In this document: piece by piece, positions 1,813-23,854 of the stretch | How positions within the stretch are numbered: position 1 is the stretch's first letter | How the letters are laid out: every line of letters begins with the position of its first letter | NCBI GenBank assembly: GCA_977020255.1 | Contig: CDROCS010000121.1 | Location: forward strand, 1-64,000 | Direction: 5' to 3' | Source of the DNA: Obrimoposthia wandeli | Lineage: Eukaryota | DNA length: 64,000 nucleotides | The notes under the pieces: model-generated | Told to the model about the DNA's origin: nothing | What the model saw: the letters and a program-made list of their open reading frames with translations, nothing else | The model's database searches: none | Translations under genes and position numbers: made by a program

Positions 1813-2781
1813 ATGATTATGAAAATCGGTGTATCAACGTGCACATTAGGAAATATGTGTCGTTATGATGGTGGGGGAGCAAAAGATAGATTTGTAGTAG
1901 ATATACTTTCAAATTATTTTTGACTTATTGGTTGCACTGTCCAAGAAGAGCCTGTCTTTGGAACACAAGAGATACTATACGGCAGGTAGAGTTGATGAAA
2001 GATTCGTGTTCATATTGGTAAAGTGGAGAAGATGTAACTGATGCCTTGCAAAACTCTTCAAATTTATTTGCACAAAAAGCAAAAAGTGATGGACTTTGTG
2101 GTTTTTGTCTTAAAATCAAAAATCTCCTACATGTGGAATGGAGAGAGTCAAAAAGTATATCAAGAAAAAAATTCACATGAATGAAAAAAAAAGTATAGGA
2201 CTTTTTGCAAAGACACTACGAGAGAGTTATATCCTTATTTACCTATTGAAGAAGAAGGAAGACTTAATGACCCATGGCTAAAAGAGAATTTTTTTGATGC
2301 AAGTATTTGCATATAAAAACTATTTGATTTTTAGAAACAAAACCATTAGTGAAACATCTTGTAGAGTTTCACACAAACTATAAAGTATCTTATTTATGCG
2401 AAATCACAAACGAGTTATAAAGAGTTGGGAAAAATAGTTGCAAATCAAGATAAAAAAAAAGATTTACAAAGTTATCTTAGATGAATATGCTGCAGGATTT
2501 TAAAAGCTATAACTTTAAAAAGTTCTATAAATAAAACATATAATGTACTTCTTCATATCTTTGGGTATTTTTAAAAGATTTAACTAAAGAGGAAAAAGAG
2601 TTTATTTGCTTAACTGCTATTAATGAATATAAATCTGGTATCATTCCACTTATTGCAGTGACAAAATACTAAATCTTTACGTAATAAGGTTTGATGAACA
2701 ATATCTAAAAACACAGAAGTTCCTCAATCCCTATCTTCAAAAGAATTTGCATTAAGAAGTGATACTAAGGCATATAAATAA
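1813..2781 (+). pseudogene. DUF523 (2-thiouracil desulfurase-like) / DUF1722 YbgA-family protein, frameshifted
   Basis: N-terminus MKIGVSTCTLGNMCRYDGG and C-terminus EFALRSDTKAYK; lies directly upstream of photolyase as in the ybgA-phr arrangement. Confidence 0.75.
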
Positions 2782-4135
2782 TGAAACAAATACTTTGGTT
2801 TAGGAGAGATTTGCGAATAGATGATAATGCTATATTATCAAATGCAAGTAATGAAGTCTTTCCGATATTTATTTTTGATAAAATATACTCAATAATTTAC
2901 CAAAATGATAAACGAGTAACTTTTATATATCAAAATGTTTTAAAGCTGAAAAAAGATCTTAAAAGTATAGGTCTTGATTTGGCTATATTTTTTGATTACC
3001 CTATCAATGTATTTGAAAAAATTACAGGATGATTTTGATGAAGTATTATGCTCTTGTGATTTTGACAATTATGCAATAAAAAGAGATAAAGATGATAGAG
3101 TCTATTTTATCAGTGAAACGATTTTATGATAGTTTTCTTATCCATCTAATGATGGATTAAAAGTTGATGAAACTCCTTATAAAGCTTTTTACCCCTTTTA
3201 TAAAAATCTTAAAGTTTTATAGCAAAGTGATAGTATACAGGAGTATGAAAAGAAATCAAAATCTAAAACTCGCTCGTAATAACTATAATAATACAATTTC
3301 ATTAGATTCTTTAGGATTTGAAAGACAAAAGATAGAATCATTTTAGATAAAAATCCATTTGAACTATTGGCTGAATTTAAAGAAAAGATGAGTAAATATC
3401 AAGAAGATAGAGATTATTTTTATAAAAGATGCTACTTCAAAGTTATCTGATTCCTTTACGATTTGGAATAATATCACCAAAACAAGTTTTTAATATTGTT
3501 AAACAGTATAGTGAGGAGAATTTACATCAGAGAACTTTTTGGAGAGAATTTATAACTATATTTTATACTTTTTCCCTAAAAGTGAATCTATGATAATTTT
3601 AAAGATAAAAGTATTACTTGGAATCAAAATGAAGACTATTTTAAGCATGGTCTACTGGAAATACTGGTGTACCAATTATAGATGCAGCTGAGACATCTCC
3701 CAATAATACAGGACAAATGCACAATCATCTTCGTATGGTTGCTTCTTTTTTTTACAAAAAATGACTATTTTACTACCCTGGCAATGGGGAGAAAAATATT
3801 TTGCTTTAAAACTTCTTGATTATGAAGCATCCTCAAATATTGGTTCATGGCAATGGAGTGCAAGTGACAGGGCAGATAGTGTTCCTTATTTTAGAGTATT
3901 TAATCCATACACACAAAGTGCAAAGTTTGATAAAGAGGGTGTCTTTATCAAATCAATTTTGACAGAATTAAAAGAAATTGAGCCAAAACTGTTCCATAAA
4001 GAAAATGCTGTACAAACAAATTTATTTATAAATTATCCAAAAGCTATAGTTGATATTAAAAAATCAAGAGAAGATGCAATAGATATCTTTAAAGGACAAA
4101 ATAACTATACTAAACTACTATTAAATATTATATAA
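2781..4135 (+). pseudogene. phrB: Deoxyribodipyrimidine photolyase / cryptochrome, frameshifted
   Basis: Starts LWFRRDLRIDDN; later fragments [60 protein letters not shown]. Confidence 0.85.
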
Positions 4136-4156
4136 TTAATAAAAATGAGGATACTT

Positions 4157-5571
4157 ATGCAAACTTTAGATTTAGCTGTAATTGGTAGCGGTATAGGTGG
4201 AAGTTTAATATCTGCTCTGAATATTGATAAAAATATTATTCTTTTTGAAAAAAGACAAAATCTTGGTGGATGTGCGAGCATTTAAAAGATATGGAAATTA
4301 TTATAATACAGGTGCAACTACTCTTGTAGGATATGAAGATAATCATATACTTAAAAAACAGTTTGATGAAATAGGAATAAAGCCAAATATAACAAAATCT
4401 GATATTGCAATTAGAATAATTCAAAATAATAAAACACTTGATAGAGTTAAAAATTTAGAAGAATTTATAAGTATTATTAATAAAATTTATCCAAATAAAA
4501 ACAATGAAATTTTGGAAAAAAATACAACAAATAGATGAAAAATTTGGCAATTAAAAAAATATATTATGCTAAATATTCTTTGCAGAAATATATGAAAACT
4601 CTTTCCTTTTTAAGTGAACTATTTACCACTTTTAAATTTGATATACTCAAAAGTGCAGATGGTTTTATAAAAGAAACTTTAGGAAATATTCCAACAGAAT
4701 ATCAAAACTTCATCGATGCACAACTTCTCATTACTATACAAAGTAAATCAAAAGGTATCTCTCTTTGCTGTCATTAGCATTAGGCCTTTCTTATCCTTTT
4801 CATGATGTTTATGTCAATAATGGAATGGGAAGTTTAATTGAGGAGATAATTAAAGATGTTGAAGTAAAAAGAAATGAGCAAATAAATAAGATAATTAAAG
4901 ATGGTCAAAACTGGATAGTTCGAAGTGATAAGGATGAATATAAAACTAAGAAAATAGTTCTAAATTCTTCTATTTATGAAACAAGTCATCTTTTGATGAT
5001 ATCAATATAAAAAATACTATGATTCTTTTTCTTTTAGTGATCAAAGTGCTTTTGTTGTTTATCTTACTATTGATACTGATATAGATTTTTAGAACATTAT
5101 CAGTTTATATATGATGAACTTTTACCAAACTGTATTTCAAATTCTTTTTTTTTGTTTCATTTAGCAAAAAGGTGATAAGTTACTATCAAGAATAATACTT
5201 TAAGTGTAACTATTTCTACACATAGCAAAGCAACAGTCTGGAAAGACTTAACAAAAGAGGATTATGAATATCAAAAAAATAGTACACAAGATTACATAGT
5301 GGCGAAATTCTTAGAGTATTTTGATACAATCAAAAAAGAAAATATAACAAAATATTTTAGCTCAACATCAAATACATTTAGTAGGTATATCGGAAGATAT
5401 AATTGTGGTGGTAAAGCAATAGGATTTAATAATATTCATCAATTGCCTAGCTGTAACACACCATTTAGTGGATTGTATAATGTTGGTGATACTATATTTG
5501 CAGGTCAAGGCTGGCCTGGTGTTGCTGTAGGAGTTGATGTATTGCAAAAGGAACTAAATGGAATCAGTTGA
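4157..5571 (+). pseudogene. Phytoene-desaturase-like FAD oxidoreductase (CrtD/CrtI superfamily), frameshifted
   Basis: MQTLDLAVIGSGIGG Rossmann motif, LGGCA..FKRYGNYYNTGATTLVG, C-terminal GLYNVGDTIFAGQGWPGVAVG. Confidence 0.7.
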
Positions 5572-6536
5572 GCTGAAAATATCAAATCGTGATTGGTTAT
5601 ATATTTCTATAATAGGTACATTATTTGGGTTTTTTATATCTGTATTTTTTTACTTTTTACATGAAACGTTTCGTGATGTGTCAACTGTATTATTTGGAAC
5701 TTGTAGTGCATTTTTTATCACACTATTTTCTTCAATATTTATATCTGTATCTAATAAATATATTCTGCCCAATCTTAATGAAAAATTTTGGTATATAATA
5801 AGTTTTTTATTTTCCTTTTTAAGTGGATCTCTGGGTTTTTTATTTACTTATTCTTTATTTTATATAATTGAAACTAAGATTACCAATATTATTGAACCAT
5901 ATAGTTTATATCTAACATTAACTATTGGTTCATTAACTTTTCTTATAGGACTGATTCTTCATCAATTCATCTCTATGAAATATAAAAATGAATCTATTAA
6001 AAATGAGATACTCAATAGTAAAATTAAAACTTTAGAAAATGAACTTAATCCTCATTTCTTATTTAATGCATTAAACTCAATGAGTGAATTAGTATATATA
6101 TAGATCCTAAAAAGCTGAAGAGTCTATTTTAAATCTATCAAAATTTCTAAGAAATGCAATCAAAATAGATAGTTTAATAAGTATAAATAATGAGCTGGAA
6201 ATGGTGCAAACATATGTAGATATTGAAAATATACGTTTTGACGATAAAATAAAACTACATATATCAAATGCTCATACTATTTATAGTCAAATACCAAAGT
6301 TCTCTATTCAATTACTTGTTGAAAATGCGATTAAACATGGCTATGAAAATAAAGAATTAAATATATTTATAGAAATAAAGCAAGAAATTACAGTATATAA
6401 TGATGGTAAGATAACAAAAAACTTAAAATTTGGTACAGGATTATCTAATTTAAATAATAGATTAAATCTCCTAAATATAGGGAAATTAAAATTTATTGAT
6501 GATAAAAAAATGAAATTTATAATAGAGGTAAAGTAA
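5558..6536 (+). CDS. LytS/YehU-family membrane sensor histidine kinase; one frameshift near 6100 joins ORFs 5558-6103 and 6201-6536
   Basis: About five TM helices, then ELNPHFLFNALNS (His_kinase), IQLLVENAIKHG and GTGLSNL HATPase motifs; adjacent LytTR regulator. Confidence 0.85.
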
Positions 6537-7250
6537 ATGAAAATATTAGTTGTAGATGATGAAAGACTTGCAAGTTCGAGGATGACACGAATTTTAAATG
6601 AACTGGGTTATGATAATATTACTGTTTTTAATGATAGTACAAAAGCAGTTATCAATATAACTAGAAATAAATATGATTTAGTATTTTTGGATATTCAAAT
6701 GCCTAACATTACAGGACTTGAATTGGCTAATATGATATTAGAAATTGAACCAAAAACATTTATTATATTTCAAACTGCTTATGAGGAGTTTGCTCTTGAT
6801 GCCTTTAAAGTTGGCGGAGTTGATTATATTTTAAAACCAACTTCTAAAGAAAACGTATTACAAAGTATAAACAAAGTAAAAAGATATATGGAAGTAGTAC
6901 CAGAAGTTCAAACAAAAAAGATTATTGGAAAAAGAGGTGATAAAATTTATCTCATTGAACTTGAGGATATATTTTATATTAAAGCAGATTTAGATGAAAT
7001 TATTATTAGAATAAAAGATGCCGATGTATATGTACGAAAAAAAATAGGAAATATGGCAGAGCTTTTAAGTAATCAAAACTTTTTTAGAATTCACCGTTCT
7101 ATTATAATCAATATTGATAAAGTAAAATCGATGCAAAGTGTTGAACAATCAAAATTACAAATATCGTTTACTGATATAGATGATATAGTTACCAGCTCAA
7201 AAGATGGGGCAAAAGATTTTAGAGACTATTTAGAGAGAAGTAGTTTATAA
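6537..7250 (+). CDS. LytTR-family response regulator
   Basis: REC domain (VVDDE, FLDIQMP, TAY, KP) plus LytTR C-terminus FFRIHRSIIIN; intact and abutting the kinase. Confidence 0.92.
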   Translation: MKILVVDDERLASSRMTRILNELGYDNITVFNDSTKAVINITRNKYDLVFLDIQMPNITGLELANMILEIEPKTFIIFQTAYEEFALDAFKVGGVDYILKPTSKENVLQSINKVKRYMEVVPEVQTKKIIGKRGDKIYLIELEDIFYIKADLDEIIIRIKDADVYVRKKIGNMAELLSNQNFFRIHRSIIINIDKVKSMQSVEQSKLQISFTDIDDIVTSSKDGAKDFRDYLERSSL

Positions 7251-7284
7251 AATCTTTAAAGATTAAACTTAAATGGTATTAAGT

Positions 7285-7815
7285 TTAGTCTTTAATTATA
7301 GTAATCACAAGCTCCCCTACAGTAAATCCAAATTTTTTCATTTTTGAATGATTTAAAATCACTCCATCTTCTTGTAAATGAAGCCAATCTTTTACATTTA
7401 TATCTATTGTAGAATCATTGTACGGTACTGTCATTGTATAATCAATCATCACAGTGTTTCCATTAGCAATCATTTGTGCTTCACCTACAATATCACCTGC
7501 TGTTCCTATAAAATTTTTATCACCTGTTGGAGTTAATGTCCAAACTCTAGTTTGTTTTTCACCATTATCATACACAAATTTTTCATCTAATGTTCCAACA
7601 CCATTTTTATCCCAAGAACCTACTAAATGACCTTTGAAAGTTTTGATAATTTTTCCACTTCTATCTTTTACCATTCCATAGGCTGTTAACTTTCCATTAA
7701 AATATTTTTGAGGAATAAATTCTGGTCCTTTATTTGTAAAGTCTTCTATTTGCATTGTTGAACATCCTGTAAAAATTAAAAGTATTGTACTTAGAAATAA
7801 AGTTTGCAGTCTCAT
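7285..7815 (-). CDS. DUF3833-family lipoprotein
   Basis: Lipobox FTGC; YFNGKLTAYGMVKDRSG, DVKDWLHLQ pattern; last gene of the ufa-like operon. Confidence 0.8.
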   Translation of the reverse strand: MRLQTLFLSTILLIFTGCSTMQIEDFTNKGPEFIPQKYFNGKLTAYGMVKDRSGKIIKTFKGHLVGSWDKNGVGTLDEKFVYDNGEKQTRVWTLTPTGDKNFIGTAGDIVGEAQMIANGNTVMIDYTMTVPYNDSTIDINVKDWLHLQEDGVILNHSKMKKFGFTVGELVITIIKD

Positions 7816-9038
7816 GCTACAAGTCCTTCATTTAAATCCATATTTTGATATCTAGTAAATGCAATTTGCACAAGATTTATATTTCTAGTTAAAAAGGCAG
7901 CTTCACAATAACAAAGATACATTTTCCACATTCTGATGAAGTATTCATCAAAGCCTAATTTTTTTACTTCTTCTAATTTTTGATTAAAGTTTTCATGCCA
8001 GATATTGAGTGTTTTTGCATAATGTTCTGTAAATTCTTCCATATGTAAAAGGTTTAGTTTTGTGTTTTTTGTAGTTACATCTAATATTTTCCCAACACTT
8101 GGAAGATGCCCTCCTGGAAAGATATACTTTTGAATAAAATCAGTTCCCTTACAATATGAACTATATCTTTGATCTGGCATTGTAATAACTTGCATTAGGA
8201 GTATACCACTTGGTTTTAACAGTGATTCACATTTTTTAAAGAATACATCAAAATATTCACGACCTACTGCTTCAAACATTTCAACAGCAATAACAGCATC
8301 AAATTCACCTTCCATATCTCTATAATCTTTTAGTATTACATCAACAGATTCTTGAATATTATGCTCTTTAAATCTACCTTCACAAAGCTTTTTTTGCTCT
8401 TTGGATAGTGTTAAAGTTGTAACTTCACAACCATACTCTTTTACTAAATGTATAGCCATGGCTCCCCAACCTGAACCAATTTCTAATACTTTTGAACCTT
8501 TTTTAAGGTTTAGTTTTTTTGCAAGTAAATCTATTTTTCTTTTTTGTGCATCAAATAAAGGTTCATCTGCTGTTTCAAATACTGCTGAAGAATACATCAT
8601 TGTATCATCTAAAAATAGTTCAAAAAAATCATTTGATAAGTCATAGTGTTCTTGAATATTTTTAGCCGAACGTGTTTTTGAGTTTTTTCTCATGATATGT
8701 TTGAGTTTATTGACTATAGGAAATAAGTTATAAAGACTAAACTTTTTTTCATCTTCGCTTTTTGTTTGTAAAGCATCCGAGTTAATAAGTCCTAATGTAA
8801 TCAATGCTGTTAAATCATCACATTCAAAATCTTTATCCATATAACTTTCAGCAAATCCAATATCTCCAAAAAAAGTAAGTCTTCTAAATAAATCTGCATT
8901 ATTTAGAACTATTTTTGCTTTTGGTTCTTGATTATTTCCATATATTTTTACTTTACTATCACAAAATGTAACTTGTAGTGTTCCTTTTGTGATTTTTGAA
9001 AAATACTTATCTCCTAAATTATTCCAAAAAGATTTCAT
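7812..9038 (-). CDS. cfa: Cyclopropane-fatty-acyl-phospholipid synthase family SAM methyltransferase (UfaM-like)
   Basis: HYDLSNDFFELFLDDTMMYSSA, VLEIGSGWG, FIQKYIFPGG, RMWKMYLCYCEAAF. Confidence 0.9.
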   Translation of the reverse strand: MKSFWNNLGDKYFSKITKGTLQVTFCDSKVKIYGNNQEPKAKIVLNNADLFRRLTFFGDIGFAESYMDKDFECDDLTALITLGLINSDALQTKSEDEKKFSLYNLFPIVNKLKHIMRKNSKTRSAKNIQEHYDLSNDFFELFLDDTMMYSSAVFETADEPLFDAQKRKIDLLAKKLNLKKGSKVLEIGSGWGAMAIHLVKEYGCEVTTLTLSKEQKKLCEGRFKEHNIQESVDVILKDYRDMEGEFDAVIAVEMFEAVGREYFDVFFKKCESLLKPSGILLMQVITMPDQRYSSYCKGTDFIQKYIFPGGHLPSVGKILDVTTKNTKLNLLHMEEFTEHYAKTLNIWHENFNQKLEEVKKLGFDEYFIRMWKMYLCYCEAAFLTRNINLVQIAFTRYQNMDLNEGLVA

Positions 9039-9039
9039 T

Positions 9040-9780
9040 TTAAGCCCTCCTAGTTGTATCTATAGCTTCTGGTCCATTAAATTTTAGACCTTTTAATTTA
9101 AGTTTTAAACTCTGCCAGATTGTTCTTGTTACTACCCAAAATGTAAGTAATGTATGTCTTGAAAATAATGAGATAATATTTGATTCATTAAAAATAAGAC
9201 TCTCTCCTATAAAAGTTGAAGTTAATACTTTTTTATTATCTTCAATAAGATTTATTCCAATAGAAAATTTTTCATTTGTGTATATTAAGTCAAATCTATA
9301 TTCCCCATCTCTTTTAAAAAATGGAGAAACATACATATCTTTTTGAGTTTCACCTTTATAGTGTTTATTATCATTTGTTTCTAGTTTTACGTGATAGATT
9401 ATTCTTCCTCCATTATAGTTATGTACTTCCGCTAACATAGTAGATGGTTTGTCGTTTTCAAAAAGGAGTAATACACTAATAGGATTAAATACATAACCTA
9501 CAATTCTGGGTAATGTAATAAATCTCATCTTTTCTGTAGGTTTTAAATCATATTTTTTTAATAGATTTTTTATATTTTCATTAAAATGAATACCTTCACC
9601 AAAATGGTCTTTGGTATTAAATGAAAAAAGATTAAAGCTGTTTAGAGAAAAGTATTTATTATCTAATTTTTCAAGTTTTGATATATCTATATCAATCATA
9701 AAGAATTTGTATTTGAAATTATGTACTTTGGGGCTATATCTTTTATGATAAATATTCCCTTCAAAAAATTTATGACTCAT
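9040..9780 (-). CDS. DUF1365-family protein (UfaO-like)
   Basis: YHKRYSPKVHNFKY, LPRIVGYVFNPIS, AEVHN, KDMYVSPF, IWQSLKLKLKG. Confidence 0.85.
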   Translation of the reverse strand: MSHKFFEGNIYHKRYSPKVHNFKYKFFMIDIDISKLEKLDNKYFSLNSFNLFSFNTKDHFGEGIHFNENIKNLLKKYDLKPTEKMRFITLPRIVGYVFNPISVLLLFENDKPSTMLAEVHNYNGGRIIYHVKLETNDNKHYKGETQKDMYVSPFFKRDGEYRFDLIYTNEKFSIGINLIEDNKKVLTSTFIGESLIFNESNIISLFSRHTLLTFWVVTRTIWQSLKLKLKGLKFNGPEAIDTTRRA

Positions 9781-11030
9781 AACTCACATCCAAATTCTTC
9801 TGCAATTGTATTTGCACTATACAAACCATCTTCATGAAAACCATATCTCCAGTAAGCCCCTGCAAAGTAAGTGTTGTTTTTACCATTGATTAGATCTCGT
9901 TTACTTTGAGCTTCTATAGCTTTTTTATCAAACTGAGGGTGTTCATAGCTTATATTTTCTATTACTTCATCTAATTTTTCTGTTTCATTTAATGAAACAA
10001 AATACTCTTTTTTACTCTTTAAATTTTGTAAACGATTTATCCAATATGACAATGTAACATTTTGGCTTTCTCCATTTGTTTTATAATTCCAAGCAGCGTA
10101 AATTTTTTTATCTGGATATAAAGCTTTTTTATCTGTATGTAAAACTGCTTTATTCTCTTTGTATTCAAAACATGAAAGAATTCGAAGTTCATCTACTGTT
10201 GGTTCATCTATTAAATTAAGTGCATCTGGTGCGTGCATAGCAAAGATAACTTTGTCATAAACTGATTGTGAATTATCTTTATGAACTAAGATTATTTTAT
10301 TCTGTTCTCTTAATACATTTATTACATCAGAATTTTTAAATATTTTTCCAGATATTTCTTTTGATATTTTTTCAACATAGTTGATAGAACCACCACTAAC
10401 TGTAAGCCATTGGTGATGAGTATCAACACCTAATAAGCCATGATTTTTAAAAAAATGTAAAAATGAACGTGCAGGAAAATCACTCATCTTATCACTAGGT
10501 GTTGACCAAATCGATGAACCCATTGGAATAATATATCTATCTTTAAAATATTTTGAATAGTCTTTTAAATACTCACCTAATGATAAATCTAAATCACTAT
10601 GATTGTTTTTTAAATCTTCATTTGCTTTTTTATTAAACTTTAATACATCAAAAATCATTTTATTATGTGAGTAAGAAAAGATATTTTTCTTTTGAAAATA
10701 CATACCTTTTAATGATTCACCATTATAAGCCAGGTTGCTTTTTTGATCCCAAAATGCAAAACTCATATCACTATTTTCAATTTTTACATCTAATTGCTCA
10801 AATAGTTTGGTAAGTAATGGATAAGTAGGGTGGTTAAATACTAAAAACCCTGTATCCACACCAAATTTCTTACCATCTTCTGTTACTTGTGAAGTTCTCG
10901 CATGACCACCTAATCTATTATCTTTTTCATAGAGATCAACATCGTGTTTTTTGCTTAATAAATATGCACTTCCTAGTCCACTTATTCCGGCTCCTAAAAC
11001 TGCTATTTTATATTTTTTTTCTTGATTCAT
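9777..11030 (-). CDS. FAD-dependent oxidoreductase, amine-oxidase family (UfaD-like fatty-acid desaturase)
   Basis: KIAVLGAGISGL, RLGGHA, VDTGFLVFNHPTYP, GAYWRYGFHEDG; directly upstream of DUF1365 and cfa. Confidence 0.85.
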   Translation of the reverse strand: MNQEKKYKIAVLGAGISGLGSAYLLSKKHDVDLYEKDNRLGGHARTSQVTEDGKKFGVDTGFLVFNHPTYPLLTKLFEQLDVKIENSDMSFAFWDQKSNLAYNGESLKGMYFQKKNIFSYSHNKMIFDVLKFNKKANEDLKNNHSDLDLSLGEYLKDYSKYFKDRYIIPMGSSIWSTPSDKMSDFPARSFLHFFKNHGLLGVDTHHQWLTVSGGSINYVEKISKEISGKIFKNSDVINVLREQNKIILVHKDNSQSVYDKVIFAMHAPDALNLIDEPTVDELRILSCFEYKENKAVLHTDKKALYPDKKIYAAWNYKTNGESQNVTLSYWINRLQNLKSKKEYFVSLNETEKLDEVIENISYEHPQFDKKAIEAQSKRDLINGKNNTYFAGAYWRYGFHEDGLYSANTIAEEFGCEL

Positions 11031-11082
11031 TTGTATCGTCCTTGCGAATCTTGTGGCGTGTATATAAATCTTTTGTACTGTT

Positions 11083-11124
11083 ATTTTATGATTATATAAA
11101 GAGTTTTTGTAGGAATAAAATGTT
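11083..11124 (-). promoter_or_regulatory. Shared regulon box plus -10 upstream of the ufa-like operon
   Basis: Minus strand AACA-TTTT-A-TTC-CTAC-AAA (11124-11106); TAAAAT at 11088-11083, 20 nt after CTAC. Confidence 0.7.
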
Positions 11125-11144
11125 GGTTGATAAGATTTTTATAA

Positions 11145-12404
11145 CTAAAATATTAAATCTTTATATTTATTGATAAAAAACAGAGCAATCAACTTCAAAC
11201 ATACAGGAAAGAGCCCATATAAAAGAGATAGTACAAGTAAAGAATCCAAGGTCGGGTTACTTACATCAAAATCAAAAAGTCCAAGTATTACGAAACTAAA
11301 AGCTACAGCAAAAGCTAATGATAATTTTGTAATCATTGTCCATATACCAAATAATAAACCAGAAATATTACTTTTATAATCTTTAGATTTTTGAACTAAA
11401 TCACTTTGTATTGCTGTAGGAAGTGCCATATCAGCTCCTAAAGATAATCCAGAAACTAAACTGATTATTATAAATGCGTTCAAATTTCCCGCTTCTAAAA
11501 AAGGTACAAATGAAAAAGCAAATGAAGCTAAAATTATTGAAGTGATCCAAGTCTTTTTTTTACCAATTTTTCCTGACAAAAAGTCCCAAAATGGAAGAGC
11601 TACAATACCAGAGAAAAAATATAATATTAAAATCATTCCTCCCGAACTCTTTTCTTGTATTACTAATTCGATAAAAAGTAAAAAAAGAGTCGCGGGAAGT
11701 GCATTTGCAAGATTATTAAAAAAGTATCCTATTTGTAAATACTTTAAGTCACTCAAATTTGTATAAATATCTTTTATATCTTTTAGAGTATATTTTTCTA
11801 CTGCTACAATATTTTTGATTTTGATTGTTTTTAAAGTGATAAAAAACAGAGGAATAAATAGAATTAAAAATGTGATGTATAATACTTGTAAAGTTTGTTC
11901 AAAGTTTTCTGAAACTTTATAAATATAAGGGATAATTAAAGCTATTAAAATACCAATAATTGTAAACAGTTCTCTTGAACTATTTAAAAGTGTTTTATCT
12001 TCATATTTTTGACTTATTTCACTACTCCATGTTAAATAAGGAATATTGATCATACTCCATCCAATATAAACTAAAATAGAAAAAGTTAAAAGCCAAAGTT
12101 TTGGAAACTCTAAATTTGGATTTATAAGTGCATAAAAACTGCAAATTAAAATAATAGAACCTAAAATCATAATGGGTTTTCTACTATTGAAATACTCAAT
12201 ACTCTTATCACTTAAATATCCAAAATATGGATCTGTAAAGACATCAGTTAATCTTGCTAAAAAGATGATCAAACCTACCGTAGCTATTTCGACACCTACT
12301 GTTGTTGCATAAAAAGTTGGTAAATATATATAAAGTGGTAAGCCTACAATTGCTAAAGGAATTGCTAGGAGACTGTAGTAAAATACTAATTGTTTTGATA
12401 GCAT
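11145..12404 (-). CDS. MFS/GPH-family transporter
   Basis: About 12 TM helices, ARLTDVFTDPYFGYLSD, SGLLFGIWTMITKLSLA. Confidence 0.85.
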   Translation of the reverse strand: MLSKQLVFYYSLLAIPLAIVGLPLYIYLPTFYATTVGVEIATVGLIIFLARLTDVFTDPYFGYLSDKSIEYFNSRKPIMILGSIILICSFYALINPNLEFPKLWLLTFSILVYIGWSMINIPYLTWSSEISQKYEDKTLLNSSRELFTIIGILIALIIPYIYKVSENFEQTLQVLYITFLILFIPLFFITLKTIKIKNIVAVEKYTLKDIKDIYTNLSDLKYLQIGYFFNNLANALPATLFLLFIELVIQEKSSGGMILILYFFSGIVALPFWDFLSGKIGKKKTWITSIILASFAFSFVPFLEAGNLNAFIIISLVSGLSLGADMALPTAIQSDLVQKSKDYKSNISGLLFGIWTMITKLSLAFAVAFSFVILGLFDFDVSNPTLDSLLVLSLLYGLFPVCLKLIALFFINKYKDLIF

Positions 12405-12406
12405 GA

Positions 12407-12844
12407 TTAAGAGTTTATCTTACTTTTTATAAATTTCATAAAAAAAGAAAGAATAGGAATTTTCTCGTATAAATTACTAGATGAATCCCAATAATCAATA
12501 TGAGATACTACTCTATTTTCTTTATTAAATTCAACTCTACTAACGCCTTCAAAAGATTCATTTTTATTACTACCTTTAAATGAAAAATGAAAATTCCATT
12601 TTAAATAGGCAATATTATGTTGTTCCACTATTTCTGTAACTATAAAACTTGGCTTATCAAGTTTTATATACATATCTTCAAATATTTTATATAACTTATT
12701 AATTCCAATAATATCATGAAAAGGATCTTTAAATCGTACCTCATTATCAAATATTTTTTCATACTCTTTTATGCTCGTGTTTTTATCAATATTTTCAAAA
12801 AATTGTGCATATATCTTTGCATTAGTATTATTTATGGTACTCAT
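12407..12844 (-). CDS. SnoaL/NTF2-like protein
   Basis: VRFKDPFHDIIG, GVSRVEF, SHIDYWD, LYEKIP. Confidence 0.85.
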   Translation of the reverse strand: MSTINNTNAKIYAQFFENIDKNTSIKEYEKIFDNEVRFKDPFHDIIGINKLYKIFEDMYIKLDKPSFIVTEIVEQHNIAYLKWNFHFSFKGSNKNESFEGVSRVEFNKENRVVSHIDYWDSSSNLYEKIPILSFFMKFIKSKINS

Positions 12845-13602
12845 GGTAGCATCTTTTTTGTAAGAGATAAAGAAATTTTATATGGCATCATTTTTAGTAG
12901 ACTTAAAAATATTCGTAATCCAAAAGGAAATCTAATTTCAAAAGCTGATGATTTTTCCATACCTTTAAGTATTTTTTCTGCGGTATATTTAGCTTCCATG
13001 AGTTGAGGCATTTTAAATGTATTTTTTGCTGTTAATTTTGTTTTTACAAATCCATGATTTATGATTTGTAATTTTATATTTGAAACTTCTAATTCCGGAT
13101 GAATAGACTCTGCAAGATTAACAAGTGCAGCTTTAGGAGCAGAGTATCCTCCTCCTTGGGGTAGTCCAAAGTAGGATGAAAGACTAGCGTTCCAAACCCA
13201 ATGCCCTTTTTTTGAATCTTTAAAATAAGGAAAAATTTCAGTCATTAATCGTATTACACCAAGATAATTTACATCATTCATCTGTTCAAATTTCACGCTA
13301 TCCCATGAATTGATACTCATTACTTCATATGCTCCTGCATTATAAAACCAAATATCTAAGCCATTGTATATATTCCATGCAATTTTAACTTTTTTAGCTA
13401 TATCACTTACTAAAGATACATCAAGATCGATTAGGCTTAATTCTTTTGGGTAATGTTCTTTAAGACTTTGTAAGTCTATGCTATTTGATGTATTTCTTGA
13501 GCTTGTGATAACAAGATAATTATTATGTAAACATAATTTTACTAACTCTAATCCAATTCCAGAACTTCCACCAACAATCCAAATTCTTTTTTTAGGTTCC
13601 AT
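12841..13602 (-). CDS. SDR-family oxidoreductase; start reassigned to the ATG at 13602
   Basis: IWIVGGSSGIG, NAG, YSAPKAA; RBS-like AAAGG precedes the MEPKK start. Confidence 0.88.
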   Translation of the reverse strand: MEPKKRIWIVGGSSGIGLELVKLCLHNNYLVITSSRNTSNSIDLQSLKEHYPKELSLIDLDVSLVSDIAKKVKIAWNIYNGLDIWFYNAGAYEVMSINSWDSVKFEQMNDVNYLGVIRLMTEIFPYFKDSKKGHWVWNASLSSYFGLPQGGGYSAPKAALVNLAESIHPELEVSNIKLQIINHGFVKTKLTAKNTFKMPQLMEAKYTAEKILKGMEKSSAFEIRFPFGLRIFLSLLKMMPYKISLSLTKKMLP

Positions 13603-13623
13603 ATTGAAGCCTTTTTTGTTTAT

Positions 13624-13664
13624 ATTATAGAGTTTTTGCATATCTTTCGTAGAGTTAATATGTC
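13624..13664 (-). promoter_or_regulatory. Shared regulon box plus -10 upstream of SDR-SnoaL-MFS
   Basis: Minus strand GACA-TATT-A-ACT-CTAC-GAA (13664-13646); TATAAT at 13629-13624, 19 nt after CTAC. Confidence 0.65.
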
Positions 13665-13698
13665 ACTTGATATATTTATTCTATCTTTATTGCCAACA

Positions 13699-14677: not shown

Positions 14678-15560
14678 GCTTGAAAATACTTTTGTAATAG
14701 GAGATGTCCATGGCTGTTACTATACCCTGCTAAAGCTAATAAGACAATTACCAGAAGATGCAGAAATTATCTTTGTTGGGGATCTTTGTGATAAGGGTGA
14801 ATTTTCTAAAGATGTTATAGAATTTGTTATAGAAAATAACTACCTTTGTGTTAAAGGAAATCATGAAAATTTATTTGAAAAACACATAAAAGATGTAATA
14901 GACAATAACAAAGATACACTTTGGAATAGTGATGAAAAATATGGTGGCTTACAATGTATTCGAAGTTATAAAGGAAACTTTTCGCTTATAAATAAACATC
15001 TAGAGTGGATAAAAAAGCTACCGATGTATTTAGAAATAGACAAGTACTTTATAACACATGGATTTGCTCTAGAGTATTATGAATATAGAAATAATAAAGA
15101 TTATTATAATGATATATTACTCTCAAGACTGTATCCAGATACTATAGAGTTAGAATCTAAAGAAAATATTATAAATGTATTTGGACATTGTATATTCCCT
15201 GAAGTCCAAATAGGCAAAAAATATATTTGTCTTGATACAGGCTGTGCATATGGTGGTAAACTCTCTGCATTACAACTTGGAACAAATAAAATATTTGTAG
15301 AACCTATGGATGAAAATGATTCAAATTATCACATTAAAGAATTAAAACTTAAAGACATTAATCTGGATTTAGATGGCTTAGAAGAGATTCGAAATATTAC
15401 ACTAAAAGATGACTGTAAATATTGTGCGTTTGATATTATATCCAATGAAGTACTAGCGTATATTGTTAAAAAATACCCAAATATAGCAAAAACTGAAATG
15501 CAATATATGAAAGAAAAAGCCATTATTTTCCCAAAACAAATAAATAAATTTTTTAACTAA
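14658..15560 (+). CDS. Metallophosphoesterase (ApaH/PrpA-like)
   Basis: GDVHG, VGDLCDKG, KGNHE, THG, GH, LDTGCAYGGKLSA motifs. Confidence 0.88.
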   Translation: MSMSLNKLENTFVIGDVHGCYYTLLKLIRQLPEDAEIIFVGDLCDKGEFSKDVIEFVIENNYLCVKGNHENLFEKHIKDVIDNNKDTLWNSDEKYGGLQCIRSYKGNFSLINKHLEWIKKLPMYLEIDKYFITHGFALEYYEYRNNKDYYNDILLSRLYPDTIELESKENIINVFGHCIFPEVQIGKKYICLDTGCAYGGKLSALQLGTNKIFVEPMDENDSNYHIKELKLKDINLDLDGLEEIRNITLKDDCKYCAFDIISNEVLAYIVKKYPNIAKTEMQYMKEKAIIFPKQINKFFN

Positions 15561-15600
15561 CATTTTATTACTATTAAAAAATATAACACTTTGATAAAAT
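15559..15600 (+). promoter_or_regulatory. Shared regulon box plus extended -10 upstream of the EAL gene
   Basis: AACA-TTTT-A-TTA-CTAT-TAA (15559-15577); TGA-TAAAAT with hexamer at 15595-15600, 20 nt after CTAT. Confidence 0.65.
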
Positions 15601-16692: not shown

Positions 16693-16734
16693 AACATTTT
16701 AGCACTACAAACAATATAAACTTTGTATTATAAT
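16693..16734 (+). promoter_or_regulatory. Shared regulon box plus -10 upstream of the hypothetical-TIGR03643-pdxH operon
   Basis: AACA-TTTT-A-GCA-CTAC-AAA (16693-16711); TATAAT at 16729-16734, 20 nt after CTAC. Confidence 0.72.
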
Positions 16735-18073: not shown

Positions 18074-18115
18074 GACATTTCACAACTACTAAATAAAATT
18101 CTTATATAGTAAACT
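18074..18115 (+). promoter_or_regulatory. Shared regulon box plus -10 upstream of phasin-ubiB
   Basis: GACA-TTTC-A-CAA-CTAC-TAA (18074-18092); TAAACT at 18110-18115, 20 nt after CTAC. Confidence 0.65.
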
Positions 18116-19971: not shown

Positions 19972-19991
19972 AATTACAAATCTTATGAAAT

Positions 19992-20056: not shown

Positions 20057-20569
20057 ATGTCTAAGTTTCTATTACTAATTATGATTTCAATATTCTTCAT
20101 TGGATGTGGAGCTAAATATCCACATCTACCTACGGTTAACAATGTTGATATTCAAAAATATAAAGGTACATGGTATGAAGTAGCAAGATTTGAGCATTTT
20201 TTTGAAAAAGGATGTAAAAATGTTACTGCAACATATAAATTAAAAGAAGATGGTGATATCAAAGTTATCAACAAATGTACAAATATAGATGATAATGAAT
20301 CAAAAGAGGCTTTTGGTATAGCTTATCCTACTGATAAAACCAACTCAAAACTAAAAGTGAGTTTTTTTAGACCATTCTATGGTGATTATTATATAATAGA
20401 TTTAGCAGATGATTACAGTTATGCACTTGTGGGAAGTCCAAGTAGAGAACTACTATGGATTCTTTCACGTACAAAAACTATTACTGATGAAACAAAAAAT
20501 AAGATTTTAAAAAAAGCAACGTTATCAGGATTTGATGTAAATAAATTCATCTGGACAATACAGGAATAA
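20057..20569 (+). CDS. blc: Bacterial lipocalin lipoprotein (Blc)
   Basis: Lipobox FIGC, KYKGTWYEVAR, KLKVSFFRPFYGDY, LWILSR. Confidence 0.9.
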   Translation: MSKFLLLIMISIFFIGCGAKYPHLPTVNNVDIQKYKGTWYEVARFEHFFEKGCKNVTATYKLKEDGDIKVINKCTNIDDNESKEAFGIAYPTDKTNSKLKVSFFRPFYGDYYIIDLADDYSYALVGSPSRELLWILSRTKTITDETKNKILKKATLSGFDVNKFIWTIQE

Positions 20570-21409: not shown

Positions 21410-22622
21410 ATGAATAACTACATCCCACACCTGAGTAAATTTGATCCAGATTCAAATGGACATTTCGGAATATTCGGAGGACGTTATGTTCCTGAAACAC
21501 TTATGCCTATATTGTTAGAACTTGAAGAAAGTTATAATAAATATAGATTTGATGAACAGTTTTGGGAAGAGAGTGAAATCTATCTTTAAAAAGAGGAGTA
21601 TGGCAAGAGTAGACCCAATCCTCTTTGTTTCGCTCCAAATATTAGTAAAGAAATAGGGCTAAGGTATATTTAAAAAGAGAAAGATTTAAGGAAAAAATCA
21701 CATACTGGTGCTCATAAAATAAACAATGTTATAGCACAAGGTGTAACCAAAAAAGACTTGGTAAAACAAAAGTTATTTAGAAACAGGGTGCAGGACAACA
21801 TGGTGTTGCAACAGCTACTGTTTGTGCTCTTATGCGGTTTTAGAGTGTACTATTTTTATGGGTGCAAAAGGCAACGTCAAGAACTTAATGTTTTTAGAAT
21901 GAAACTACTAGGTGCAAAGGTTGTATCAGTTGAATCAGGAAGTAGATCTTTAAAAGATGCAATGAATGATGCAGAATTCAGTTTTTGGGTTACAAATGCT
22001 AGAGATACTTTTTATATCATTGGGACGTTGCTAGGTCTCATCGCAGCTCTATGATGTTAAAGAGATTTTCAAGCTATCATTGGTTGGGAAACAAGACAAC
22101 AAATTCTTGAAAAGAAAATGAGCTTCCTGATAAAGTTATCGCTTGGTGGTGAATTGAGATCTATGCTATTGGTATGTTTTCACATTTTTTAGAGGATGTT
22201 GATGTAGAGTGTATTGGAATAGAAGCTGGTGGTCATGGAATCGAAACTGATATGCATGGTTGTAGTTTGAAAAAAGGAAGTCCGGGAGTATTACATGGAC
22301 AATGTTCTTATTTATTGCAAGATGAAGATGGACAAGTACAAGAAGCACATTCTATATCTGCTGGATTAGATTATCCAGGAATTGGACCTGAACATAGTTT
22401 CCATAATGATTTAGGTAGGAAATGATAATCACTGATGATGAAGATGGATGCATTTGTATGGTTAAGCCAAAAAGAGGGTATCATACCAGCTTTGATCAGA
22501 ATCATGCCATAGCATATTTGAAAAAAGCTAAAGAAACATTACAAGGTAAAATAGTAGTTATCAATCTATCTGGTCGTGGTGATAAAGATATACAACAAGC
22601 AAATGAGATTTTTAAATTTTAG
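21410..22622 (+). pseudogene. trpB: Tryptophan synthase beta chain, heavily frameshifted
   Basis: [74 protein letters not shown]. Confidence 0.9.
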
Positions 22623-22689
22623 TTTCATTAATTATTTGACGAAGAACATTGGTAAATAGACATCTTCTAAATTTTCAAAAAGTTAGATA

Positions 22690-22872
22690 CGTAAGAGTAT
22701 AACACCTCAAAAAAAGCAGACAATAATTTCTAAATTTCAATTAACAATAAAATTTAAAGGGTAGAAAATGAGTCGAAAAAGAACTACATATAGTACAGAA
22801 TTTAAAACAAAAATAGTATTGGAAGTTTATATTACACCTAAAAACCAAGACAATTTTTTACTTGCTAAGTAG
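22690..22872 (+). mobile_element. IS3-family remnant (left end plus the first ~20 codons of OrfA)
   Basis: ORF 22768-22872 begins MSRKRTTYSTEFKTKIVLEV, typical of IS3 OrfA HTH starts, then breaks off; no OrfB follows. Confidence 0.6.
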
Positions 22873-23179
22873 TTTTTGTATATTTTGTATCTTGTCTTGC
22901 AAATTCTTTTACAAATTGATCTCTCAATGCCACAGGTCCATTTATAATTTCTATAAAGAATTTTGAATCTTCTTTGAATCTAAGTTCTTTCATTATGTCA
23001 TCTATATCTTTTTCTCTAAAAGAACTGGTCATGACAAAATCTAAATCAAATGAGGAATAAAATTGTTTGGTGTATATCTCCATACACCATCCACCGGATA
23101 ATACAGCTATATAATTCTTGTCATCTAATTTTTGACATACATAAGCCGCCAACTCTTGTATATTAAAATTACTTAGCAT
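22865..23179 (-). pseudogene. Truncated nucleotidyltransferase-fold protein
   Basis: ELAAYVCQKL..AVLSGGWCMEIYT..YSSFDLDFV carries a GG/DxD NTase motif; the C-terminus is cut where the IS remnant ends. Confidence 0.6.
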
Positions 23180-23530
23180 GTGTAATAGCAGGACTATAAT
23201 TTGTATTGTGTGAGGATTGATATTCTAGAGGTTTATCTTTTTTCGTGAAGCTTCCTCTTTTATTGTAATCATCGAGTTCTTCTATTAAGTCTTCTTCATA
23301 TGCAGATTTGGCTCTTTTTAGTAATTGTAACAATTCTTTGTAGAAAGGGTATCTTTTGTTTAATTCGTAGAATCTTGTGTTTCCTATCGTTTTACCGATA
23401 AGGATATTACCATCTTCATATTTAACAATTTGTTTTTTACACCTGATGTGGATATCTTATAAAATCTTGAAATCTCTCTTATATAACAGTTATATTTAAA
23501 TGTCAAGATAGTGATATATTATGTACCTTT
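23169..23530 (-). pseudogene. Frameshifted winged-HTH regulator overlapping the NTase start (absent from the ORF track)
   Basis: Manual translation gives CYIREISRFYKISTSGV / KQIVKYEDGNILIGKTIGNTRFYELNKRYPFYKELLQLLKRA...KDKPL; stop at 23169-23171. Confidence 0.55.
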
Positions 23531-23740
23531 GCTTTTTATCTATTGGTGTACAGCAGAATCAACTGTGGACATTATATTTCATATGAATTAAAAAATGGAG
23601 TATATTGTATAAACACATTGTCACTGCAATTGTCAAAAAAGAAATTTTGTTATCAACAAATCAAATAATCTCTAATACTTTAGTAAAGTGTGACTATTTA
23701 TGTGACATTCTTTTTGTATAATAGCAAAAAAAGGGCATAA

Positions 23741-23854
23741 ATGAATGAAATAAAACTAGTATCAAGATGTGTTAATTCTTGGTTGGATAATTATATGAAG
23801 GCTAAGAGTTATAGTGATGTTAGAGATACTGTTTTGAAGATTAAGGGGGTTTAG
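23741..23854 (+). CDS. Small ORF (37 aa, MNEIKLVSRCVNSWLDNY...)
   Basis: AAGGG RBS, TATAAT at 23717-23722, stop 3 nt before the next gene; function unknown. Confidence 0.35.
   Translation: MNEIKLVSRCVNSWLDNYMKAKSYSDVRDTVLKIKGV

What the first reader, a model, noticed from the sequence alone, without database searches (positions are those of the whole stretch)
7285..13602. Complete furan-fatty-acid-type gene set in a Campylobacterota-like genome
Seen: SDR-SnoaL-MFS followed by FAD oxidoreductase-DUF1365-cfa methylase-DUF3833, all intact on the minus strand, with two copies of the box. Established: in Rhodobacter sphaeroides a Cfa-family methylase (UfaM), an FAD desaturase (UfaD) and a DUF1365 protein (UfaO) make methylated furan fatty acids that scavenge reactive oxygen, and SDR, GPH transporter and DUF3833 genes lie beside them. 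Inference: this organism may make furan or methyl-branched fatty acids instead of cyclopropane ones; I know of no demonstration in this phylum.
Basis: partly seen in the sequence, partly recalled or inferred. Interest (0 to 1): 0.7.

Follow-up and report, generated by a model that had tools for sequence, protein, structure and literature searches.

The report
Furan fatty acid genes in Arcobacteraceae
A marine Arcobacter-like bacterium carries an intact copy of the three-enzyme pathway that makes antioxidant furan fatty acids in two alphaproteobacteria; this is an ordinary member of a widespread gene cluster, but its product has never been shown in this phylum.

Summary
Seven intact, tightly packed minus-strand genes lie at 7285-13602: SDR, SnoaL-like, GPH-type MFS, FAD oxidoreductase, DUF1365, CMAS-family methylase and DUF3833. 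Both copies of the promoter box are present.

The contig is from an Arcobacteraceae bacterium. Its methylase is 88% identical to that of Arcobacter sp. LA11.

I fetched the Rhodopseudomonas palustris ufaD-ufaO-ufaM locus using a published primer. The window's genes have the same order and are 35%, 25% and 37% identical to it.

- **Methylase placement:** it falls in a supported clade (96/91) with R. palustris UfaM and every DUF1365-adjacent methylase sampled. That clade is separate from canonical Cfa enzymes. An AU test rejects grouping it with canonical Cfa (p = 0.0145).
- **Active-site signature:** it carries the UfaM type (EMFEAVG and Q-x-I) in place of the canonical type (GMFEHVG and H-x-I).
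- **Conservation:** every residue invariant in nine other UfaD and UfaO homologues is kept. dN/dS is 0.05-0.22.

The product itself remains untested.

The same cluster is common in public Arcobacteraceae, Sulfurovum and Sulfurimonadaceae genomes and across Proteobacteria, so this is a new member of a known kind. The scan noted this same stretch once more, in another window, under the promoter box. It has not noted it on other DNA.

The parts
12841..13602 (-). SDR oxidoreductase (253 aa from ATG 13602), first gene of the upstream unit; counterpart of RSP1087-type SDR
   Evidence: Pfam adh_short E 5.5e-30. Aligns 1-253 with the LA11 SDR at 77%. 31% identical, E 1e-40, to the SDR of the Azospirillum ufa cluster.
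12407..12844 (-). SnoaL-like / NTF2-fold protein; its start overlaps the SDR stop by 4 bases
   Evidence: Pfam SnoaL_2 and DUF2358. Homologous to the NTF2-family genes next to the SDR in the Azospirillum and Pseudoalteromonas clusters (annotations).
11145..12404 (-). GPH-family MFS transporter (419 aa); counterpart of the RSP1089-type symporter
   Evidence: Pfam MFS_2 E 5e-55; NCBIfam gph subfamily E 1e-30, below its cut-off. Conserved at this position in LA11, Sulfurovum and two metagenome relatives.
9777..11030 (-). UfaD-like FAD-dependent fatty-acyl desaturase (417 aa)
   Evidence: Pfam Amino_oxidase and NAD_binding_8. 35% identical, E 2e-92, over the full length to R. palustris UfaD. Keeps 59 of 59 columns invariant in nine homologues.
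9040..9780 (-). UfaO-like DUF1365 protein (246 aa), the candidate furan-forming oxygenase
   Evidence: Pfam DUF1365 E 5e-56. 25% identical, E 5e-27, to R. palustris UfaO. Keeps 16 of 16 columns invariant in nine homologues.
7812..9038 (-). UfaM-type SAM-dependent fatty-acyl methylase (408 aa, CMAS family with N-terminal DUF7884)
   Evidence: Pfam CMAS E 4e-93. 283 bits against R. palustris UfaM, compared with 189-212 bits against solved Cfa structures. UfaM-type signature. Clade support 96/91. AU test p = 0.0145. dN/dS 0.046.
7285..7815 (-). DUF3833 protein (176 aa), last gene of the unit; counterpart of RSP1088-type gene
   Evidence: Pfam DUF3833 E 1e-60. 36-39% identical to the DUF3833 genes of the Pseudoalteromonas and Klebsiella clusters.
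11091..11129 (-). Promoter region of the ufaD-ufaO-ufaM-DUF3833 unit: box core 11110-11124, then 12 nt after CTAC, then TATAAT at 11091-11096
   Evidence: Box and 12-nt spacing are conserved upstream of the matching LA11 unit.
13624..13670 (-). Promoter region of the SDR-SnoaL-MFS unit: box core 13650-13664, then 19 nt after CTAC, then TATAAT at 13624-13629
   Evidence: Box and 19-nt spacing are conserved upstream of the LA11 SDR gene.

Best explanation
This is the Arcobacteraceae version of the bacterial methylated furan fatty acid (FuFA) pathway. It is organised as two transcription units, each behind a lineage-specific promoter box.

Inferred mechanism, by homology to R. sphaeroides and R. 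palustris:
1. The UfaM-type methylase (7812-9038) transfers a methyl group from SAM to cis-vaccenoyl chains already in membrane phospholipids. It resolves the carbocation to a trans olefin (11-methyl-12-trans-18:1) rather than closing a cyclopropane ring.
2. The FAD enzyme UfaD (9777-11030) desaturates this to the 10t,12t diene. This step needs O2.
3. The DUF1365 protein UfaO (9040-9780) inserts one oxygen atom from O2 to close the furan ring, giving a 9M5-type FuFA that scavenges singlet oxygen and radicals in the membrane.

The SDR, SnoaL-like, GPH-type MFS and DUF3833 genes are conserved companions. Their counterparts are dispensable for synthesis in R. sphaeroides. I infer that they handle oxidised or turned-over products.

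Shown here: gene content, orthology, signature residues, synteny, purifying selection and promoter boxes. Inferred: the chemistry and the product.
For: - **Domains:** Pfam assignments for all seven genes.
- **Reference locus:** the R. palustris ufaD-ufaO-ufaM locus was retrieved with a primer from PMC7380195. The window proteins match over their full length at 35%, 25% and 37% identity, with E 2e-92, 5e-27 and 1e-96.
- **Signature:** at E. coli Cfa positions G236, H240 and H266, the window protein, R. palustris UfaM and all nine other DUF1365-adjacent methylases have E, A and Q. All six canonical Cfa have G, H and H.
- **Tree:** the ML tree gives a UfaM-type clade at 96/91. The AU test rejects the canonical-Cfa placement, p = 0.0145.
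- **Invariant residues:** 59/59 for UfaD and 16/16 for UfaO are retained.
- **Selection:** dN/dS is 0.05-0.22 for all seven genes against a 95%-identical relative.
- **Synteny:** the same cluster occurs in Arcobacter sp. LA11, a Sulfurovum MAG and two metagenome contigs. In alpha- and gammaproteobacteria it sits next to sigmaE-ChrR or MerR regulators, photolyase, NTF2, SDR, DUF3833 and lipocalin genes.
- **Published function:** ufaM, ufaD and ufaO are sufficient for 9M5-FuFA, and RPA2569-2571 complement an R. sphaeroides triple mutant (PMC7380195). A clustered Halomonas ufaM gives 11-methyloctadec-12-enoate in E. coli (PMC12089945).
Against: - There are no lipid data for any Campylobacterota. 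The paper searches found none.
- The Campylobacterota methylases sit on a long stem (1.04 substitutions per site). UfaO is only about 25% identical to the validated enzyme, so substrate chain length or product could differ.
- Steps 2 and 3 need O2, and many relatives are microaerophiles.
- I could not retrieve R. sphaeroides UfaM (RSP2144) itself. The reference is strain XCP of R. palustris, an orthologue of the tested CGA009 genes: one primer matches exactly, one has two mismatches, and one does not match within two mismatches.
- The neighbouring sensor kinase is frameshifted in this assembly, so regulation here may be impaired.
Confidence: 0.65

Rival explanations
1. The pathway is truncated or altered in practice. 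The methylase makes methyl-branched monoenes (and perhaps the diene), but the divergent DUF1365 protein does not close a furan ring, or does so only at oxygen levels these bacteria rarely meet. The physiological products would then be methyl-branched unsaturated acyl chains.
For: UfaO is only 25% identical to R. palustris UfaO. Both later steps need O2 (PMC7380195).
Against: All 16 columns invariant in nine other UfaO homologues are kept. UfaO dN/dS is 0.136. The gene is retained in every Campylobacterota copy examined.
Confidence: 0.15
2. The three enzymes act on a different acyl substrate or give a different oxygenated lipid than 9M5-FuFA. An example would be a product based on 16:1 rather than 18:1. 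The four companion genes would process it further into something not yet described.
For: The Campylobacterota clade has a long stem branch. The SDR, SnoaL-like, MFS and DUF3833 companions are conserved and under purifying selection, yet their counterparts are dispensable for FuFA synthesis in R. sphaeroides. Lipocalin genes are embedded in the relatives' clusters.
Against: No positive evidence for another product. The companions are equally present in proteobacterial clusters.
Confidence: 0.12
3. The methylase is an ordinary cyclopropane fatty acid synthase, as public annotation says, and its neighbours are unrelated stress genes.
For: NCBIfam and public names say 'cyclopropane-fatty-acyl-phospholipid synthase'. 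The best solved structures by sequence are Cfa enzymes.
Against: All NCBIfam Cfa equivalog scores are far below their cut-offs: 312 against 600, and 286 against 400. The signature is the UfaM type. The tree and AU test place it away from canonical Cfa. Start and stop codons overlap between ufaD-ufaO and ufaM-DUF3833, which indicates one operon.
Confidence: 0.04
4. The cluster is a decaying relic, like the broken photolyase operon beside it, and no longer functions in this organism.
For: The adjacent DUF1722, photolyase, amine-oxidase and histidine-kinase genes are split across reading frames here but intact in relatives.
Against: All seven genes are uninterrupted. dN/dS is 0.05-0.22. All family-invariant residues are kept. 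Both promoters are conserved.
Confidence: 0.04

Closest known systems
Rhodopseudomonas palustris RPA2571-RPA2570-RPA2569(-RPA2568) = ufaD-ufaO-ufaM (Lemke et al. 2020, PMC7380195)
   Same: Same three enzymes in the same order and on one strand. Full-length homology of 35%, 25% and 37%. Same methylase signature and clade.
   Different: In R. palustris strain XCP the gene after ufaM is a PLP-dependent enzyme, not DUF3833, and no SDR, SnoaL or MFS gene lies in the 8-kb locus. R. palustris also has FufM for dimethyl-FuFA, and no such second methylase is in this window. It belongs to a different phylum.
Rhodobacter (Cereibacter) sphaeroides RSP1091-1087 operon plus RSP2144 (ufaM), sigmaE-ChrR regulon
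   Same: Same companion set: FAD oxidoreductase, DUF1365, 402-aa RSP1089, 186-aa RSP1088 and 245-aa RSP1087 (sizes from PMC7380195). These match the window's MFS (419 aa), DUF3833 (176 aa) and SDR (253 aa).
   Different: ufaM is unlinked in R. sphaeroides and clustered here. Control there is by sigmaE-ChrR. Here no sigma or anti-sigma gene is nearby, and a LytTR response regulator, a histidine kinase and a lineage-specific box are found instead.
Gamma- and alphaproteobacterial 'photo-oxidative stress' clusters (Pseudoalteromonas sp. THAF3, Klebsiella pneumoniae, Acinetobacter schindleri, Azospirillum sp. B510, Rhizobium tropici, Legionella lytica)
   Same: NTF2/SnoaL, SDR, FAD oxidoreductase, DUF1365, Cfa-family methylase and DUF3833, with photolyase and lipocalin nearby. 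The companions are homologous.
   Different: Those clusters carry sigmaE-ChrR or MerR regulators and often DUF2878, chalcone-isomerase-like or DUF1295 genes. None of those is here. The MFS gene is absent from the six loci sampled.
Halomonas sp. YLGW01 ufaM (PMC12089945)
   Same: Clustered ufaM-ufaD-ufaO. Expression of ufaM in E. coli gave 11-methyloctadec-12-enoate.
Escherichia coli Cfa and other canonical cyclopropane fatty acid synthases (PDB 6bqc, 5z9o, 7qos)
   Same: Same CMAS fold family and SAM-binding core. The E239 and Y317 equivalents are kept.
   Different: The H266, H240, G236 and C139 equivalents are Q, A, E and S. It falls in a separate clade and is genetically linked to ufaD and ufaO.

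Membership tests
UfaM-type fatty-acyl methylase (cis-vaccenate 11-methyltransferase) | CMAS-family SAM-dependent methyltransferase domain with the lipid-binding N-terminal domain | tested here: met
   PF02353 E 4e-93 and PF25371 (DUF7884) E 3e-8.
UfaM-type fatty-acyl methylase (cis-vaccenate 11-methyltransferase) | Groups with an experimentally supported UfaM rather than with canonical Cfa | tested here: met
   The clade with R. palustris UfaM has 96/91 support. The AU test rejects grouping with canonical Cfa, p = 0.0145. The reference is the strain XCP orthologue of RPA2569. R. sphaeroides RSP2144 was not obtainable.
UfaM-type fatty-acyl methylase (cis-vaccenate 11-methyltransferase) | Sequence signature separating the clade from Cfa. 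I derived this signature here; it is not a published definition. | tested here: met
   EM[FI]EAVG and Q-x-I occur in all 14 UfaM-type rows, including the window. GM[FLV]EHVG and H-x-I occur in all 6 canonical rows.
UfaM-type fatty-acyl methylase (cis-vaccenate 11-methyltransferase) | Product is 11-methyl-12-trans-18:1 from phospholipid-bound cis-vaccenate | not testable with these tools
   Needs an enzyme assay or FAME GC-MS.
UfaD fatty-acyl desaturase | FAD/NAD(P)-binding amine-oxidase-fold protein encoded directly upstream of ufaO, homologous over its full length to a validated UfaD | tested here: met
   (35% identity, E 2e-92, residues 8-417). 59/59 invariant columns retained.
UfaO (DUF1365) furan-forming oxygenase | DUF1365 domain protein encoded between ufaD and ufaM, homologous to a validated UfaO | tested here: met
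   PF07103 E 5e-56. 25% identity, E 5e-27. 16/16 invariant columns retained.
UfaO (DUF1365) furan-forming oxygenase | Incorporates an O2-derived oxygen into the 10t,12t diene to give 9M5-FuFA | not testable with these tools
   Needs 18O2 labelling or an in vitro assay, as in PMC7380195.
SigmaE-ChrR singlet-oxygen regulon | Control by an ECF sigma factor and a ChrR anti-sigma factor encoded nearby | tested here: not met
   No sigma or ChrR domain in any ORF scanned between 5.5 and 21.4 kb. A LytTR response regulator (6537-7250) and a split His_kinase gene sit there instead, as in LA11 and two metagenome relatives. The rest of the genome was not available.
Canonical cyclopropane fatty acid synthase (Cfa) | Reaches the curated equivalog score and keeps the bicarbonate-site residues (E. 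coli C139, E239, H266, I268, Y317; these positions come from my knowledge of the E. coli enzyme literature) | tested here: not met
   NCBIfam scores are 312 against a cut-off of 600 and 286 against 400. C139 is S and H266 is Q, while E239, I268 and Y317 are kept.

The most novel reading that the evidence does not exclude
In marine Campylobacterota the furan fatty acid pathway has been rewired. It would be driven from lineage-specific box promoters, probably through the adjacent LytTR response regulator and its kinase (with a BLUF protein next door in Sulfurovum), rather than through sigmaE-ChrR or MerR.

In this particular lineage the pathway is kept under strong purifying selection while the neighbouring photolyase operon has decayed. 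That would point to a role independent of light, such as protecting membranes from radicals at oxic-sulfidic interfaces, and to Campylobacterota as an unrecognised source of furan fatty acids in marine food webs and sediments.
Probability: 0.2. Interest if true: 0.55.

Novelty: new member of a known kind. Interest (0 to 1): 0.35.

Why it matters
Furan fatty acids are potent membrane antioxidants. Their bacterial synthesis has been worked out only in two alphaproteobacteria, with one further methylase tested from Halomonas.

Showing that Arcobacteraceae, Sulfurovum and Sulfurimonas relatives make them would do three things:
- extend the pathway to a new phylum that dominates oxic-sulfidic interfaces;
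- add a possible bacterial source for the furan fatty acids found in marine animals;
- provide a simple sequence rule (Q for H266, A for H240, E for G236 in E. coli Cfa numbering) to separate UfaM-type methylases from the many genes now annotated as cyclopropane synthases.

As it stands, this is a sound annotation improvement and not a discovery.

Tried and rejected
- **R. sphaeroides reference:** PMC4143029 and PMC2579311 are not held.
- **R. palustris primers:** the RPA2570 forward primer does not match L002 within 2 mismatches, and the RPA2571 primer matches with 2. L002 is therefore an orthologous strain, not CGA009.
- **Generic promoter and terminator scan:** uninformative in this AT-rich DNA, with 43 sites found against 46.6 expected.
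- **Exact box pattern in relatives:** it finds only one site each in LA11 and Sulfurovum, at chance level, and the LA11 site lies inside a gene. The orthologous promoters carry looser variants that I found by eye and by fuzzy matching.
- **Box as a fixed -35 element:** rejected as the simple reading, because the distance from the box to the -10 element is 12 nt at one promoter and 19 nt at the other.
- **Pfam on fragments:** the 21.4-23.8 kb fragments and the N-terminal 119 residues of the EAL protein gave nothing.
- **Plasmid search:** it yielded no Campylobacterota record, so a canonical Cfa from this phylum is missing from the tree.


Full report
**Observation.** Between 7285 and 13641 the mechanical ORF list shows seven uninterrupted minus-strand ORFs and nothing comparable on the other strand. 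Pfam assigns them as follows:

| Coordinates | Family | E-value |
|---|---|---|
| 7285-7815 | DUF3833 | 1e-60 |
| 7812-9038 | CMAS methyltransferase with N-terminal DUF7884 | 4e-93 |
| 9040-9780 | DUF1365 | 5e-56 |
| 9777-11030 | Amino_oxidase / NAD_binding_8 | - |
| 11145-12404 | MFS_2 (GPH-type) | 5e-55 |
| 12407-12844 | SnoaL_2 | - |
| 12841 onward | adh_short (SDR) | - |

The 253-aa SDR of Arcobacter sp. LA11 aligns from residue 1 to that ATG, and 13603-13641 holds the promoter. Inside each half the genes abut or overlap by 4 bases, as expected of operons. The only gaps are 114 nt in front of the FAD-oxidoreductase gene and the region in front of the SDR gene.

**The box.** Both gaps hold the same motif. 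Its core, RACATNTNANNNCTA, lies at 11110-11124 and 13650-13664 on the minus strand.
- The window has five exact matches, all intergenic, all between 11 and 18 kb and all pointing at the downstream gene. Shuffles give 0.91 on average, and none of 100 reaches five.
- I derived the pattern from these sites, so the statistic is only indicative.
- The two promoters also share CAAAAACTCT(T)TATA(T)AAT.
- In Arcobacter sp. LA11, box-like sequences lie upstream of the matching genes with the same box-to-TATAAT spacing, 12 nt and 19 nt. This is better evidence than the count.
- The spacing differs between the two promoters, so I read the box as a regulator site rather than a fixed -35 element. This is an inference.

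**Organism and distribution.** The methylase is 88% identical to that of Arcobacter sp. LA11 and Poseidonibacter MAGs. It is about 79% identical to Halarcobacter and 69-73% identical to Sulfurovum, Sulfurimonadaceae and 'Campylobacterales' proteins. The same row of genes is present in several places:
- LA11;
- a Sulfurovum MAG, where a BLUF protein is encoded next to it;
- two metagenome contigs whose methylase is 94-95% identical.

Those relatives have a lipocalin gene directly upstream of the FAD-oxidoreductase gene. This window lacks it at that place.

**Comparison with the validated pathway.** Lemke et al. 2020 (PMC7380195) showed that UfaM, UfaD and UfaO are sufficient for 9M5-FuFA synthesis from phospholipid-bound cis-vaccenate. 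In R. palustris the three genes are adjacent (RPA2571, RPA2570, RPA2569). In R. sphaeroides, RSP1087, RSP1088 and RSP1089 are dispensable for synthesis.

I used the published RPA2569 forward primer to scan the genome collection and obtained the R. palustris strain XCP locus, L002. Its ORFs are an Amino_oxidase protein, a DUF1365 protein and a CMAS protein, in that order. The window proteins align over their full length with them:

| Enzyme | Identity | E-value |
|---|---|---|
| UfaD | 35% | 2e-92 |
| UfaO | 25% | 5e-27 |
| UfaM | 37% | 1e-96, 283 bits |

The best solved Cfa structures score lower against the methylase, at 189-212 bits. All NCBIfam Cfa equivalogs fall far below their cut-offs.

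**Is the methylase UfaM-like or Cfa-like?** I collected 23 CMAS-family proteins whose neighbours I could read.
- Ten lie beside a DUF1365 gene: the window, LA11, Sulfurovum, R. palustris, Pseudoalteromonas, Klebsiella, Acinetobacter, Azospirillum, Rhizobium tropici and Legionella.
- Six are canonical Cfa: E. coli, Ralstonia, Vibrio, Leptolyngbya, Enterococcus and Clostridium butyricum.
- The remainder are three further Campylobacterota proteins and four others.

Two motifs separate the groups without exception:

| E. coli Cfa position | Canonical Cfa | UfaM type (incl. R. palustris UfaM and the window) |
|---|---|---|
| 236-242 | GM[FLV]EHVG | EM[FI]EAVG |
| 266-268 | H-x-I | Q-x-I |

Cys139 is usually Ser in the UfaM type. 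From my knowledge of the E. coli enzyme literature, C139, E239, H266, I268 and Y317 are the bicarbonate-site residues. A changed site fits an enzyme that ends the reaction by olefin formation instead of ring closure, but that link is my inference.

The maximum-likelihood tree puts all fourteen UfaM-type rows on one side of a branch with 96/91 support. An AU test rejects the alternative in which the Campylobacterota proteins go with canonical Cfa: the log-likelihood difference is 13.5 and p = 0.0145. The Campylobacterota clade has a long stem of 1.04 substitutions per site.

**Integrity.**
- All 59 alignment columns invariant in nine other UfaD homologues are kept in the window, and so are all 16 invariant in nine other UfaO homologues.
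- Against the closest relative with DNA (L020), dN/dS ranges from 0.046 for UfaM to 0.216 for the SDR.
- The SDR, SnoaL-like, DUF3833 and lipocalin genes are homologous to the cluster partners in Azospirillum, Pseudoalteromonas and Klebsiella.

**Context.** In the proteobacterial loci the cluster sits with sigmaE-ChrR or MerR regulators and photolyase. Here and in the Arcobacteraceae relatives there is no sigma/ChrR pair near it. Instead, a LytTR response regulator, a His_kinase protein, a second amine-oxidase-fold protein, a photolyase and a DUF1722 protein lie convergent to the DUF3833 gene.

In this window four of those genes are split across reading frames; only the LytTR gene is intact. 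Identity to L020 also falls sharply across the DUF3833 | LytTR boundary, from 92-95% to about 60% or less. Long ORFs elsewhere in the window are intact, so this is localised.

**Literature.** No paper in the searchable library combines furan fatty acids with Arcobacter. The two papers that combine them with Campylobacter or Epsilonproteobacteria terms are unrelated gut studies. The eight papers that mention DUF1365 do not treat this phylum. A Halomonas ufaM from a ufaM-ufaD-ufaO cluster gave 11-methyloctadec-12-enoate in E. coli (PMC12089945).

**Verdict.** The product is still an inference, which I put at about 0.65 for a methylated furan fatty acid. The cluster is widespread and already present, though generically annotated, in many public Campylobacterota genomes. 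I therefore rate it as a new member of a known kind with moderate-to-low interest.

The scan has one other note on this same stretch, concerning the promoter box. 

Noticed in passing
window 1819-6533: The DUF1722-type, photolyase, 471-aa amine-oxidase-fold and His_kinase genes are each split over two to four reading frames here. They are intact in Arcobacter sp. LA11 and in two metagenome relatives. The kinase break lies at a TATATATATAG run near 6095-6103. Reads could not be consulted, so this may be real decay or local assembly error.
   Followed up: partly
window 6537-7815 (boundary at about 7250-7285): Protein identity to the closest relative (L020) drops abruptly from 92-95% (DUF3833, UfaM) to about 60% (LytTR regulator, kinase) across the convergent gene boundary. 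LA11 is equally distant there. This suggests a recombination breakpoint or a divergent allele of the regulator-photolyase segment.
   Followed up: partly
window 11031-11144: The relatives (LA11, Sulfurovum MAG, L020, L021) all have a Lipocalin_2 gene between the MFS and ufaD genes. This window has only 114 nt with the promoter box there. A different lipocalin gene lies at 20057-20569.
   Followed up: partly
window 15559-15573, 16693-16707, 18074-18088 (and a weaker site near 19990): Further copies of the same box lie upstream of an EAL-domain gene, an unknown 118-aa gene followed by DUF2805 and pyridoxamine-phosphate oxidase genes, and a phasin-like gene followed by an ABC1 kinase gene. Together with the two copies in the finding, this looks like one regulon.
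   Followed up: partly
window 21410-23850: This is another stretch without long ORFs. Its start reads like the N-terminus of tryptophan synthase beta (…[15 protein letters not shown]…), and a later part contains HTGAHKINN. It looks like a broken trpB, but Pfam found nothing in the pieces.
   Followed up: partly
L011 663-1691 and L008 8963-10012: Rhizobium tropici and Acinetobacter schindleri carry a second, shorter CMAS-like methylase next to a DUF1295 gene beside their ufa clusters. The two form a very distant clade of their own in the tree. They may be candidates for a second methylation step of the FufM kind. This was not tested.
   Followed up: no
L014 1384-1815: In the Sulfurovum MAG a stand-alone BLUF (blue-light sensor) gene lies immediately upstream of the SDR gene of the same cluster. 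This hints at light control in that lineage.
   Followed up: no
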